DNA of 64,000 nt. It comes from Asterias rubens (Eukaryota). This document shows, in pieces, positions 14,501 through 17,500 of the stretch. The notes under the pieces were generated by a model, which was given only the letters and a program-made list of their open reading frames with translations, ran no database searches and was not told where the DNA came from. The position numbers were made by a program, and so were the translations under genes. Each line of letters opens with the position of its first letter. Position 1 is the first letter of the stretch. The stretch lies in contig NC_047064.1 in assembly GCF_902459465.1 (NCBI RefSeq), forward strand, positions 310,001 through 374,000. The letters are read 5' to 3'.

Positions 14501-17500
14501 GGATTATGGATTACATCACAGGAGAGGACCTGACTAGGACGATTCATGGCTTGACGTCAGACACCATGTATTACTTTAAGATTCAATCTCATACTAGCCG
14601 AGGAGAAGGACCAATATCTGATGTTGTATCTGCTTCAACACCTACAGGTAATGCATGCAAAGTATTATTGTATTGTGACAGCTTTAAAAATAAATGTTCC
14701 TTAACTGAACTGAACTGAACTATTGTTTAGTCCTGATACTTCATCGAGGCAATGAAGGTAATTGCCTCCATGCCCCCCTGGTCATTGCCTTGGTGCCCTT
14801 GAAACGCTCCAGAAGAAATTTACTCATAGGGTGTCCTTTACCAAGGAGAAAATGCCCTGGTGCCCTTGCCCTTTCAAAAACGAAGCAGACGGACTTGAAT
14901 GTGCTAGTTAATGTAGTCAAGTTCAGGGCATAATGAGCACAATGTAGAATATTTACTCTGAACAAATTTTGACAGTTGATGATGTTTCAAAATGAAAAAC
15001 GTTACATCTTTTCCCATGTACCACATACAATGCATAAACACTGTGAATAATGGTGAAGATATTTCTTGAAAAAGTTTTTTTTAAATACTTTTTATAGTAA
15101 TTACAAATTACAACCCCCCCCCCAAAAAAAAATACAATTTTCTAAAAAATTAACACATTTGCAAGAGAATATACAGTTAAAGTTTGTTGGTTTGACTTGG
15201 ATATTTTAATTAATAACTTCACATTATTTGATATTGTTTTTGGAGTAAAACATGAACAAGCACTTTGTTATGCTAATCATATTTCCTTTCACGCATCATA
15301 ATTGTTTGTTTTTGTTGTTTTTCATTTGGTGGTTTTTTTGTGTATTGTTTATGATTGAATTTTGTTAATTTTGAATGTTGTTTATTTCCCTGTGTTTGCA
15401 TTCCATTCTCCTCCCCTACACCACCACACCACACTGCGTGCACTTCCATTCTGCTTTATAGCTCTCATCGTGCCACCTATACCACCAATTACAGGTAAGA
15501 AATTACCAACTTCATGTTTCTCAAGACTCCCCTCAGAGAACTTGAAAGACTAGGGTGTTTTCTGTTTGTAAGAATATTGTAGATGTTCACAATTTGCAAA
15601 TACTAGTAGAGCGAGTGTACAGTGCTAATGTGGGCGAGCTTTAGAAAATGATTGTGTTTAATTGATTTTCATTCAAGGTAATTATTTATTTCCACTTTAT
15701 GTAAGCAGTGTAATATCTTAAGGAAACTAAGGGCCCAACAAAAGAAATCAAAACATGAATGATTGAATGAGTGACACAGTTTATGTAGAGTAGTTGAAAA
15801 GTAGTTTGATTATATGACTTTTTATCTGACCTTGTGTCTTGGCTTAATGTAGCTGTGGAATTTGACCTGAGCGATGTTCTGAACCATGATCATAATGATG
15901 ATCAGACACAAGGTGCTCAAATTTAAAACCATTTTCTAAACTCCCTATAAAATATAATACCTGACAGTCATGTTCCCTCGCATGATGAAATCCTTTATGG
16001 TATATATGCATGATGTTCATTTGTGAAAGCCAATAAGTTTATAGTTTTTCCTGTTTTCATAGTGGTTGCCTTTGTAAAAATAAAGTTCTCTGCTCCAAAT
16101 AATATATACTAAAATGTAAAGTTATTCTTTAGTAATCTTCTGGTTATTGAATTGTTGTTTACATTTCCTGATATTATCCTGTTTATAATTCTTGTTGGAC
16201 AGTTACATTCTTGTTACCTCAGGTACACAATGTTATCAGGATGTTTTATTCCCATGTTAAACCTATAATAATATTCTTTCCATTTCACTCTTTGTTTCCA
16301 TTTAAAAACCTATAATAGTATACTCTCCAGTCATCTCTGTGATTGTATTTGTGAAGTTCAGCCTGTAAATATATGAAGCAAAATGTTTAATTGCTGTTGT
16401 TTTATCTTATATGTCCAGCATATCTTTTTTTGACCACTTTCCTTATTATTTAAGGAAAGATCATGCGACAATGTTTGAACAAAACAATATAAACATAATC
16501 AGCAGTGTTTAAGCATAACCTGACCTGATTGAGTTGGAAGAGGGCATTGTCACATGGGGTTGCGCCGAGCAAGCACATTTCACTGCCCAATTTTAGTTTG
16601 ATAAAATGGTGAAAGACTTCTCTTGAAATATTATTCCATGAAATGCTTTACTTTTCGAGAAAACATTAAAACAATTATCAATTCTCGTTGTCGAGAATTA
16701 CGGATTTATTTTAAACACATGTCATGACATGGCGAAACGTGCGGAAACAAGGGTGGGTTTTCCCCGTTATTTTCTCTCGACTTCGATGACCGATTGAGCC
16801 TAAATCTTCACAGGTTTGTTATTTTTTATATCAGTCGTGATACACGAAGTGTGTGCCTTTGGACAATACTGTTTACCGAAAGTGTCCAATGGCTTGAAAT
16901 GGCCTTAGACTTATTACCAACTCTTTCTAGTACTGATTTCACTTAATATGTCCATCTTGTGTATGTCACTCTTGTATCTGAAGACAAAATGTTGGTATGA
17001 TTGATTGTTGATACTAAAGAAGACTAAGAAGACTAAGCATTCTTCCTGGCTTCTTGAATTCCACAGTTCCATCTGCCGGACCTCCTCTTGCTGCAGCTGG
17101 TGCATTGGGATTTCCTTGGTGGTTATGGCTCCTCATCATCTTAGCTATCCTCTTCATAATCATCTTAGCCGTACTCCTCTTACTTTGCTTCATGTGTGGT
17201 TGCTGTGCATGGTGCGCTCGTTGCTGTCCATGCTGCGCAGCTTACTGTGATGACATCTGCGGCTGTTGTGCACCAATCTGTGGACCCATAGCAGCATGCT
17301 TTGCTGGCTGCTGTCCTTGTTGCTGTGAAGATGAAGATGGTTGTGCAAAGTGTTGGTTGAAGTTCTGCTGCGGTGCATCAGCGTGTGTCTGCTGTGGTCA
17401 GGCATACAGGGAAAGAAAGAAAGCAAAGGGATCTGCGTAAGTTTCATTTTATTTTTGGTAGTGTAATGATGATGTTATTTTAGGTTTTACCTCTACACCA

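What the first reader, a model, noticed from the sequence alone, without database searches (positions are those of the whole stretch)
17067..17436. Extreme Cys-rich juxtamembrane domain (27 Cys in 70 aa) grafted into a netrin receptor
Seen: right after the TM helix comes [70 protein letters not shown], then RERKKAK, spliced in frame to the P1 exon. Established: vertebrate DCC is palmitoylated at a single TM-proximal Cys for raft targeting, and CC/CCPCC clusters are typical of palmitoylated cysteine strings and CYSTM-like modules. Inference: a massively S-acylated membrane-hugging arm, or a metal or redox sensor, which I do not know from any DCC/Neogenin/Frazzled/UNC-40 protein.
Basis: partly seen in the sequence, partly recalled or inferred. 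Interest (0 to 1): 0.8.

Follow-up and report, generated by a model that had tools for sequence, protein, structure and literature searches.

The report
Echinoderm neogenin's giant juxtamembrane cysteine string
The only DCC/neogenin-type guidance receptor of the starfish Asterias rubens carries, right after its membrane helix, a transcribed 70-residue stretch with 27 cysteines that all five echinoderm classes share and other sampled animals lack, most likely a heavily fatty-acylated membrane anchor.

Summary
Exon 17067-17436 (+) encodes a short ectodomain stub, a transmembrane (TM) helix, 70 aa with 27 Cys, then a basic cluster. It joins its neighbours in frame through canonical splice sites.

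- **Gene:** Asterias rubens neogenin-like (XP_033624348.1), the only Neogenin_C gene found in this genome.
- **Expression:** RNA reads cover the whole exon as deeply as the constitutive FN3 exon. No internal splice was listed, and all six isoforms retrieved keep the tract.
- **Distribution:** the tract is not a one-off. Orthologues from asteroids, echinoids, holothuroids and an ophiuroid have 24-29 Cys, and crinoids have 16-17. Two hemichordates, a ray and about 100 arthropod homologues have 1-4.
- **Conservation:** residue order and length are conserved beyond composition, around an invariant CGC...CP...PCCC-x2-E core.
- **Origin:** it was not grafted as a new exon. The TM exon keeps phase 1 to 2 from hemichordate (163 nt) to starfish (370 nt), so the tract grew inside it, starting at the family's TM-end Cys.
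- **Family searches:** Pfam gives no CYSTM or metallothionein hit. The nearest solved-structure matches, at borderline E-values, are coronavirus spike TM plus Cys-rich tails.
- **Function:** multiple S-acylation is my best reading (about 0.6) but is untested. Metal binding is the main rival.

I found no paper describing the tract. It is a new variant of a known kind.

The parts
14453..14647 (+). Upstream constitutive exon: second half of the last FN3 domain. It ends in phase 1.
   Evidence: fn3 Pfam hit. Splice sites read. Equal RNA depth, and a joint leaving at 14647.
15462..15494 (+). 33-nt cassette exon ([11 protein letters not shown]) in the extracellular linker just before the TM exon.
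   Evidence: Present in isoforms X5, X11, X13, X14 and X16 and absent in X9. GT..AG joints 14647>15462 and 15494>17067 in raw reads and contigs.
15853..15912 (+). 60-nt cassette exon ([20 protein letters not shown]) in the same linker.
   Evidence: Present in isoforms X11, X13, X14 and X16. Joints 15494>15853 and 15912>17067.
17067..17436 (+). The TM plus cysteine-string exon, 370 nt, phase 1 to 2.
   Evidence: Even RNA coverage, and contigs spanning it in one block.
17111..17185 (+). Transmembrane helix, FPWWLWL...LLLL, with an aromatic outer rim found in all echinoderm orthologues retrieved.
   Evidence: Hydropathy scan. AlphaFold2 helix with pLDDT above 90. P8, W10, L11 and W12 are invariant in alignment A1.
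17186..17395 (+). Cysteine string: 70 aa with 27 Cys, on the cytosolic side. The proximal module (CxxCGCC...[10 protein letters not shown]) is shared by all echinoderms. The distal module (CAKCW..CCG...CVCC) is found in all classes except crinoids.
   Evidence: Two polymorphisms (17236 C>T, 17263 C>G) are both synonymous.
17396..17434 (+). Basic cluster [13 protein letters not shown] at the 3' end of the exon. It occupies the same place as the KKRK cluster that ends the hemichordate TM exon.
18324..18526 (+). Next exon, carrying the P1 motif ([10 protein letters not shown]).
   Evidence: Neogenin_C hit at profile positions 3-36, E 7e-4. Splice sites read. Contiguous in P0001.
35996..36103 (+). 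Last exon, carrying the P3 motif ([14 protein letters not shown]).
   Evidence: Neogenin_C hit, 43.6 bits, E 4.6e-11. It is the only Neogenin_C match in the whole genome.

Best explanation
This is a real, constitutively included, phylum-specific elaboration of the DCC/neogenin receptor. A 41-70-residue cytosolic cysteine string begins at the cysteine that ends the TM helix.

Most likely mechanism (inferred, not shown):
- Membrane-bound DHHC acyltransferases S-acylate the TM-proximal cysteines.
- Each added lipid pulls the next cysteines to the bilayer, so much of the string becomes acylated.
- The first ~70 cytoplasmic residues then lie flat on the inner leaflet.
- That would bias the receptor towards ordered (raft-like) lipid domains and clustering. 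It would also hold the P1 motif, about 40 residues further on, close to the membrane.

Evolution (shown): the string arose inside the ancestral TM exon, between the family's conserved TM-end Cys and the basic cluster, after echinoderms split from hemichordates. Crinoids have the short form.
For: **Real and expressed**
- (see the observation check).
- All 6 A. rubens isoforms and all 11 Antedon isoforms retrieved keep the tract.

**Conserved under constraint**
- Found in 12 echinoderm species from five classes, with 16-29 Cys. Found in none of the 108 non-echinoderm homologues, which have 1-4 Cys.
- 87% of the A. rubens Cys positions are Cys in the 9 eleutherozoan sequences.
- Tract identity to other eleutherozoan classes is 51-63% (34-37% to crinoids, which lack the distal module). 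That is higher than the last FN3 domain, the P1 region or the spacer, and close to P2-P3.
- Alignment scores beat 300 of 300 composition-preserving shuffles.
- Length is exactly 70 aa in asteroids and echinoids.
- The A. amurensis protein is identical over the exon. Both polymorphisms seen are synonymous.

**Fits S-acylation**
- Type I topology puts the tract in the cytosol, directly on the TM end.
- The non-Cys residues are mostly small or hydrophobic (A 11, G 6, P 4, F 3, I 3, W 2). That suits a membrane interface.
- The usual post-TM basic cluster is displaced to the far end of the tract.
- At least 17 separate loci over the Pfam DHHC cut-off exist in the genome.
- AlphaFold2 finds no confident autonomous fold; pLDDT is below 50 beyond the helix.
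- The best solved-structure matches of the profile are coronavirus spike TM plus Cys-rich endodomains (7kip, E 0.0077; PWWVWL-TM-CC..GCCGCC). SARS-CoV-2 spike is S-acylated on 10 cytosolic cysteines (bioRxiv 10.1101/2021.03.14.435299; PMC8379822).
- DCC's embedding in rafts depends on palmitoylation in its transmembrane region (PMC8125918, citing Herincs et al. 2005).

**Origin**
- The TM exon is phase 1 to 2 in Saccoglossus (163 nt), Antedon (268 nt), Diadema (355 nt) and Asterias (370 nt).
Against: - No chemical evidence of acylation exists for this protein.
- The strict positional and length conservation, the invariant Gly and Pro residues, and the conserved acidic run after CCPCCC are more than bulk lipidation would seem to need. 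They could point to a defined metal-thiolate structure or a specific binding partner.
- Acylation of cysteines 40-70 residues from the membrane rests on a 'zipper' assumption.
- The spike similarity is borderline and composition-biased (bias 18.8 against a score of 18.0 for the best stretch). It shows analogy only.
- RNA depth of about 10x cannot exclude a minor tract-skipping isoform.
- An in-phase but weak GT lies at 17194, right after the helix.
- The joint 17436>18324 was not observed directly, because the laid stretch stopped before the intronic tandem repeat.
Confidence: 0.6

Rival explanations
1. The tract is a cytosolic metal-thiolate domain (Zn, Cu, Cd or an Fe-S cluster; metallothionein-like). 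It would fold around metal ions and make receptor signalling or stability sensitive to metal or redox state.
For: - Cys content is 39%, with CC, CxC and CxxC spacings.
- Cys positions, Gly36, Pro46, Pro75 and the acidic run are invariant or nearly so.
- Length is fixed, and residue order is conserved beyond composition. That is what a defined cluster geometry would require.
Against: - No metallothionein or other metal-binding Pfam family matches any of 11 orthologues, even at E up to 10.
- The tract contains W, F, Y, I and L and few polar residues, whereas metallothioneins are hydrophilic and nearly free of aromatics (general knowledge).
- It sits directly on the membrane, where DHHC enzymes act.
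- AlphaFold2 gives no fold, although it does not model metals.
Confidence: 0.2
2. The tract is a redox or oligomerisation switch. Reversible disulfides, or thiol modification between or within receptor tails, would control clustering.
For: Many adjacent thiols sit on a receptor whose signalling depends on multimerisation (established for DCC/neogenin; general knowledge). The tract is strongly conserved.
Against: - The cytosol is reducing, so stable disulfides are unlikely there.
- Nothing in the sequence resembles known redox-active motifs flanked by a fold.
- Pfam gives no support.
Confidence: 0.1
3. The tract is a functionless low-complexity expansion, a gene-model artefact, or a segment that most transcripts skip.
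For: - A weak 21-nt two-copy repeat lies inside the tract.
- TGY-rich simple repeats occur elsewhere in the genome.
- RNA depth is only about 10x.
Against: - RNA coverage is even, and contigs span the exon in one block.
- The tract is present in every isoform retrieved.
- It is positionally conserved across all five echinoderm classes, which by general knowledge diverged roughly 500 million years ago.
- The polymorphisms seen are synonymous.
- The other CCPCCC-coding loci in the genome are unrelated.
Confidence: 0.03

Closest known systems
Vertebrate DCC palmitoylation in the TM region (raft targeting)
   Same: Same receptor family. The echinoderm tract starts at the family's conserved Cys at the cytosolic end of the helix (IC-TRR in a ray, VC-RRR in Saccoglossus, LLLLC-FMC in Asterias). 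DCC's raft association and netrin-1 response depend on palmitoylation in its transmembrane region (PMC8125918).
   Different: There are 1-4 Cys in the 90 aa counted from the last residues of the helix in all non-echinoderm members sampled, against 16-29 in echinoderms. The basic cluster that normally follows the helix is pushed about 70 residues downstream.
Coronavirus spike TM plus cysteine-rich endodomain
   Same: Same layout: an aromatic rim (PWWVWL or PWYIWL against FPWWLWL), a TM helix, then a Cys cluster starting at the helix end (CC..GCCGCC against C..CGCC.CC). These are the best solved-structure hits of the echinoderm profile. SARS-CoV-2 spike is S-acylated on 10 cytosolic Cys, mainly by ZDHHC20, and this alters membrane lipid organisation (bioRxiv 10.1101/2021.03.14.435299; PMC8379822; PMC10640587).
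   Different: Similarity is borderline (E 0.008-0.08 for the better matches) and driven by composition. I make no claim of homology. The aligned spike tails show far fewer cysteines (10 in SARS-CoV-2), and the proteins are otherwise unrelated.
Cysteine-string protein (DNAJC5/CSP-alpha) and other palmitoylated Cys clusters (SNAP-25; the phospholipid scramblase CCCPCC motif)
   Same: Dense runs of cytosolic Cys, including CCPCC-type motifs, serve as multi-palmitoylated membrane anchors (general knowledge, not tested here).
   Different: Those strings are shorter (about 14 Cys in 24 aa in CSP, from memory) and sit in soluble or peripheral proteins without an adjoining TM helix. No sequence family is shared.
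CYSTM modules and metallothioneins
   Same: High Cys content.
   Different: No HMM match to either, even at E up to 10, in any of 11 orthologues. CYSTM is a C-terminal tail-anchor module, not the start of a cytoplasmic tail about 1000 residues long. Metallothioneins are soluble and hydrophilic.

Membership tests
DCC/neogenin receptor family | Ig plus six FN3 ectodomain, a single TM helix, and a cytoplasmic tail with the P1, P2 and P3 motifs (Pfam Neogenin_C) | tested here: met
   fn3 hits on five upstream exons. Neogenin_C hits on the P1 exon (E 7e-4) and the P3 exon (43.6 bits, above the cut-off of 25). Full-length P0001 carries I-set, fn3 and Neogenin_C domains and is named neogenin-like by NCBI. 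It is the only Neogenin_C locus found in the genome.
S-acylated juxtamembrane cysteine clusters (works-like class, not a sequence family) | Cysteines on the cytosolic side, at or near the end of a TM helix | tested here: met
   Type I topology follows from the domain order. The first Cys is the last helix residue, and 27 Cys follow within 70 aa.
S-acylated juxtamembrane cysteine clusters (works-like class, not a sequence family) | Thioester-linked fatty acids actually present on the cysteines | not testable with these tools
   This needs acyl-exchange chemistry or mass spectrometry. DHHC acyltransferase genes are present, at 17 or more separate loci over the Pfam cut-off.
CYSTM (PF12734) | Match to the CYSTM profile, as a Cys-rich C-terminal tail-anchor | tested here: not met
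   No Pfam hit for the exon at E up to 1. None for 11 orthologous segments at E up to 10. The tract is followed by about 950 further residues.
Metallothioneins | Match to a metallothionein profile; a small, soluble, aromatic-poor Cys-rich protein | tested here: not met
   No Pfam metallothionein family appears. The tract holds 2 W, 3 F and 1 Y and is membrane-attached. Metal binding itself was not tested.
Coronavirus spike S2 endodomain | Homology to spike S2 (heptad repeats, fusion machinery) beyond the TM and Cys-rich tail | tested here: not met
   The profile matches only about 46 spike residues covering the TM helix and the first Cys residues, at E 0.008-0.08 for the better matches and with high compositional bias. 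The rest of the protein is Ig/FN3/Neogenin_C.

The most novel reading that the evidence does not exclude
The tract may be more than a lipid anchor. It could be a two-part regulatory device built in stem echinoderms onto the phylum's only DCC/neogenin receptor.
- The TM-proximal cysteines would be acylated.
- The invariant CCPCCC-acidic core and the distal module would form a metal- or redox-dependent structure, or a docking site.
- Netrin/RGM signalling in echinoderms would then be gated by dynamic acylation or by metal state.

It would also be the longest and most Cys-dense TM-anchored cysteine string that I know of in any receptor, and a convergent copy of the coronavirus spike design.
Probability: 0.15. 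Interest if true: 0.8.

Novelty: new variant of a known kind. Interest (0 to 1): 0.6.

Why it matters
DCC/neogenin receptors are central to axon guidance, cell migration and BMP/RGM signalling. In vertebrates their raft association depends on palmitoylation in the transmembrane region. Echinoderms have turned that position into a 41-70-residue string of 16-29 cysteines and kept it across all five classes, on what appears to be their only receptor of this family.

- **Clean natural experiment.** The hemichordate orthologue has the same exon without the tract. That allows a direct test of what extreme juxtamembrane lipidation, or metal binding, does to a guidance receptor. Sea urchin and sea star embryos are tractable for this.
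- **Molecular marker.** The tract, together with the FPWWLWL rim of the helix, looks like a character shared by all echinoderms.
- **Stringent substrate.** It would be a demanding test case for how DHHC enzymes process long cysteine strings.

Tried and rejected
- **Pfam, exon and orthologues.** No family covers the tract, so CYSTM and metallothionein are rejected as memberships.
- **Protein atlas look-alikes.** The best score was 0.77, to influenza B NB glycoprotein. That is below any useful threshold, so I ignored it.
- **Word-indexed homologue search with the 122-aa exon alone.** No hits, so no small protein family emerged as a donor of the exon.
- **Own-genome search with the exon peptide.** Only the exon itself was found.
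- **CCPCCC-coding DNA pattern in the genome.** It gave 44 sites. The eight loci fetched are unrelated Cys-codon simple repeats or a tandem CCCCFSGC-type array on contig C20. A shared mobile Cys module is rejected.
- **AlphaFold2 on an 11-sequence alignment.** Only the TM helix is confident, so I ran no fold search because the matches would be meaningless.
- **tRNA scan and repeat scan around the exon.** Nothing relevant.
- **Literature searches.** No description of the tract. The 'echinoderm adhesome' paper (PMC3565218) is not held.
- **Other notes of this scan.** None on similar Cys tracts.
- **Exon structure in other species.** Isoforms P0006, P0037 and P0027 were not on record. P0016 (Antedon) and P0035 (Diadema) worked.
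- **Limits of the read laying.** I kept the laid stretch short of the 39-bp x 11 tandem repeat at 17837-18266, so the joint from 17436 to the P1 exon was not observed directly.
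Full report
**1. What is in the sequence**

Window 17067-17436 (+) is a 370-nt exon bounded by cag|TT and GC|gtaagt. In frame 17069-17434 it is open and encodes four parts:
- a short ectodomain stub;
- a strongly hydrophobic helix, FPWWLWL...LLLL, with 19-residue Kyte-Doolittle means up to 3.8;
- exactly 70 residues containing 27 Cys (14 TGT, 13 TGC);
- the basic run [13 protein letters not shown].

The exon starts in phase 1 and ends in phase 2. It fits the upstream FN3 exon, which ends ...ACAG|gt at 14647. It also fits the downstream exon, which starts at 18324 and encodes [10 protein letters not shown], the P1 motif. 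The DNA is not a simple repeat. Tandem Repeats Finder sees only a weak two-copy 21-nt array at 17199-17248.

**2. What gene it is**

- Upstream exons hit Pfam fn3. The 18.3-kb exon hits the start of Neogenin_C (P1). The 36-kb exon hits its end (P3, 43.6 bits).
- A phmmer search of 1.84 billion representative proteins returned a 2029-aa protein 100% identical over the exon. NCBI names it neogenin-like isoform X9 of Asterias rubens, XP_033624348.1.
- The window lies on contig 3 of a 417.6-Mb assembly.
- A six-frame search of that genome with Neogenin_C found only this locus. As far as that search can tell, this is the starfish's single DCC/neogenin-family gene. No tract-less paralogue was found.

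**3. Is the tract expressed, or spliced out?**

I laid two raw RNA-seq runs and two transcript-like contig sets on 14446-17830.
- In run X14 the four bins over the exon hold 8.8, 9.4, 9.9 and 5.7 reads. That is about 9-12x after correcting for the exonic share of each bin. The FN3 exon at 14453-14647 has the same depth (9.2 and 6.9). Both flanking introns read zero.
- The listed joints, all GT..AG, are 14647>15462, 15494>17067, 15494>15853 and 15912>17067. They define two small alternative cassette exons in the extracellular linker. They also confirm the acceptor at 17067.
- No joint inside the Cys exon was listed.
- Contig X3 record 8 (1271 nt) runs FN3 exon, cassette, then 17063-17436 without a single difference, and continues 256 nt beyond the donor. 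Contig X1 record 6 covers 17065-17433 and continues 234 nt.
- I did not include the P1 exon in the laid stretch, to stay clear of a 39-bp x 11 tandem repeat at 17837-18266. The 17436>18324 joint therefore rests on phase logic, the NCBI models and the contigs running on past the donor.
- All six A. rubens isoforms retrieved (X5, X9, X11, X13, X14, X16) contain the identical tract. They differ only in the cassette exons just upstream.
- Two polymorphisms in the exon, 17236 C>T and 17263 C>G, are both synonymous.

**4. Distribution**

Two homologue searches anchored on the full-length protein plus the representative search gave orthologues from all five echinoderm classes:

| Class | Species |
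|---|---|
| Asteroidea | Asterias amurensis, Acanthaster planci, Patiria miniata |
| Echinoidea | Strongylocentrotus purpuratus, Lytechinus pictus, Diadema setosum, D. antillarum |
| Holothuroidea | Apostichopus japonicus, Holothuria leucospilota |
| Ophiuroidea | Amphiura filiformis |
| Crinoidea | Antedon mediterranea, Anneissia japonica |

I counted Cys in the 90 residues that begin near the cytosolic end of the helix. The distribution is bimodal:
- 24-29 Cys in asteroids, echinoids, holothuroids and the ophiuroid;
- 16-17 in crinoids;
- 1-4 in all 108 non-echinoderm homologues. These are the hemichordates Saccoglossus and Glandiceps, a ray, scorpion, sea spider, many insects and a few unlabelled Logan sequences.

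The all-protein phmmer search found no non-echinoderm DCC-family protein matching the tract at E up to 1e-3. Molluscs, annelids, cnidarians, nematodes and cephalochordates were not in my sample of homologues.

**5. Conservation**

- In alignment A1 (11 species) the invariant positions include C32, C35, G36, C37, C41, C45, P46, C69, P75, C76, C77, C78 and E81. This gives a CxxCGC...C...CP...C...PCCC-x2-E core. P8, W10, L11 and W12 of the helix rim are also invariant.
- Crinoids have only this proximal module (41 aa). The other four classes add a distal module, CAKCW..CCG...CVCC.
- 87% of the A. rubens Cys positions are Cys across the 9 eleutherozoan sequences. Identity at non-Cys positions is 53%.
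- Tract identity between Asterias and the other eleutherozoan classes is 51-63%. The last FN3 domain gives 33-56%, the P1 region 15-50%, the P1-P2 spacer 27-31% and the P2-P3 end 64-70%.
- High Cys content inflates identity, so I shuffled each orthologue's tract 300 times. Shuffled identity is 36-40%, and observed alignment scores exceed every shuffle. For S. purpuratus the score is 305 against 90 +/- 13.
- The tract is exactly 70 aa in asteroids and echinoids, and identical between the two Asterias species.

**6. Origin**

I located the orthologous exon in three other genomes. In every case TM helix and tract lie in one exon that starts in phase 1 and ends in phase 2.

| Species | Group | TM exon length |
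|---|---|---|
| Saccoglossus kowalevskii | hemichordate | 163 nt (one Cys at the helix end, then RRRADENMAKKRK) |
| Antedon mediterranea | crinoid | 268 nt |
| Diadema setosum | echinoid | 355 nt |
| Asterias rubens | asteroid | 370 nt |

The tract is therefore an expansion inside a conserved exon. It is not a grafted exon. It sits between the family's TM-end cysteine and the basic cluster that closes the exon.

No donor gene or shared module was found. The exon peptide matches nothing else in the genome. It finds no small-protein family. The other CCPCCC-coding sites in the genome are unrelated simple repeats.

**7. What it resembles**

- Pfam gives nothing for the tract, in the exon at E up to 1 or in any of the 11 orthologues at E up to 10.
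- The protein atlas gives no usable look-alike.
- AlphaFold2 on alignment A1 models the TM helix at pLDDT above 90 and everything after it below 50. No autonomous fold is predicted. The alignment is shallow and metals are not modelled.
- A profile of A1 searched against all PDB sequences returns, as its best hits, the TM helix plus Cys-rich endodomain of coronavirus spikes. The top hit is 7kip at E 0.0077, and SARS-CoV-2 spikes score around 0.05.
- The aligned pieces are PWWVWL, helix, CC..GCCGCC against FPWWLWL, helix, C..CGCC.CC. The score is heavily composition-biased, so I read it as convergence and not as homology.
- It still names the best-studied analogue. SARS-CoV-2 spike is rapidly S-acylated on 10 cytosolic cysteines, chiefly by ZDHHC20, with effects on membrane lipid organisation (bioRxiv 10.1101/2021.03.14.435299; PMC8379822; PMC10640587).

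**8. Most likely mechanism**

Shown:
- The tract is cytosolic and starts on the last helix residue.
- It is rich in small and hydrophobic residues.
- The usual post-helix basic cluster is displaced to its far end.
- The genome holds 17 or more separate DHHC loci over the Pfam cut-off.
- It begins at the family's conserved TM-end cysteine. Vertebrate DCC needs palmitoylation in its transmembrane region for raft association and netrin-1-driven outgrowth (PMC8125918).

Inferred:
- DHHC enzymes acylate the proximal cysteines.
- Progressive acylation zips the string onto the inner leaflet.
- The receptor is then driven into ordered domains or clusters, with P1 held near the membrane.

I give this reading about 0.6. 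The main rival, at about 0.2, is a metal-thiolate domain. Strict positional and length conservation, invariant Gly and Pro, and the conserved acidic run are what a defined cluster would need. Against it stand the hydrophobic and aromatic content, the membrane position and the absence of any metallothionein-like profile match. A redox or disulfide switch (about 0.1) is unlikely in the reducing cytosol. A functionless or mis-modelled segment (about 0.03) conflicts with the RNA data and the conservation.

**9. Novelty and verdict**

The sequences are already public as unremarked predicted proteins. I found no paper that mentions the tract. One relevant paper, the echinoderm adhesome, is not held.

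In kind this is a palmitoylation-type cysteine cluster on a known receptor, so it is a new variant of a known kind. In degree it is extreme. It is also a clean phylum-level character with an obvious experimental handle. Interest 0.6.

Noticed in passing
window 15462-15494 and 15853-15912 (+): Two small cassette exons (33 and 60 nt, both phase 1-1) lie in the extracellular linker between the last FN3 domain and the TM exon. RNA joints and NCBI isoforms use them combinatorially. Saccoglossus has an 18-aa exon in the same position (L010:85089-85142).
   Followed up: partly
window 16593-16931 and 14672-14897: These intronic segments have RNA depth in the hundreds to thousands, against about 10x for the gene. 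About 97% of the laid reads fit only partly and run on into unlike sequence. Many 'opposite strands' joints link 16605 with about 16876. This looks like a dispersed, highly transcribed repeat or foldback element, not part of this gene.
   Followed up: no
window 17837-18266: A 39-bp x 11 tandem repeat (97% matches) lies in the intron between the Cys exon and the P1 exon. It creates long spurious ORFs on the minus strand.
   Followed up: no
G000:C20:4002591-4029685 (minus strand); L002: A roughly 27-kb stretch holds many CCPCCC-coding sites. In the 7 kb fetched (L002) they lie inside tandem CCCCFSGC-type open frames of 90-139 aa with 36-65 Cys. This is either a Cys-rich repeat gene array or a satellite. 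It is unrelated to the neogenin tract.
   Followed up: partly
window 46546-64000 (+): A second gene, rich in FN3 exons, follows the neogenin gene on the same strand and runs off the window. It has no Neogenin_C match. Another note of this scan (s1-150336) covers it.
   Followed up: no
alignment A1, columns 100-150: The P1 motif PPDLW(I) is intact in asteroids and echinoids. It is degenerate in the ophiuroid (PDLLW), holothuroids (PDVLM) and crinoids (PDVVF). Holothuroids and crinoids also lack the basic cluster after the tract.
   Followed up: no
P0003 (Logan, 122 aa): This orphan transcript fragment has the same FPWW rim, helix and a thinner Cys tract (13 Cys, ...CCASCCPC-Y-GSDEDE). It is most like the holothuroid form. 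It may be a divergent echinoderm orthologue in which the string is partly eroded.
   Followed up: no
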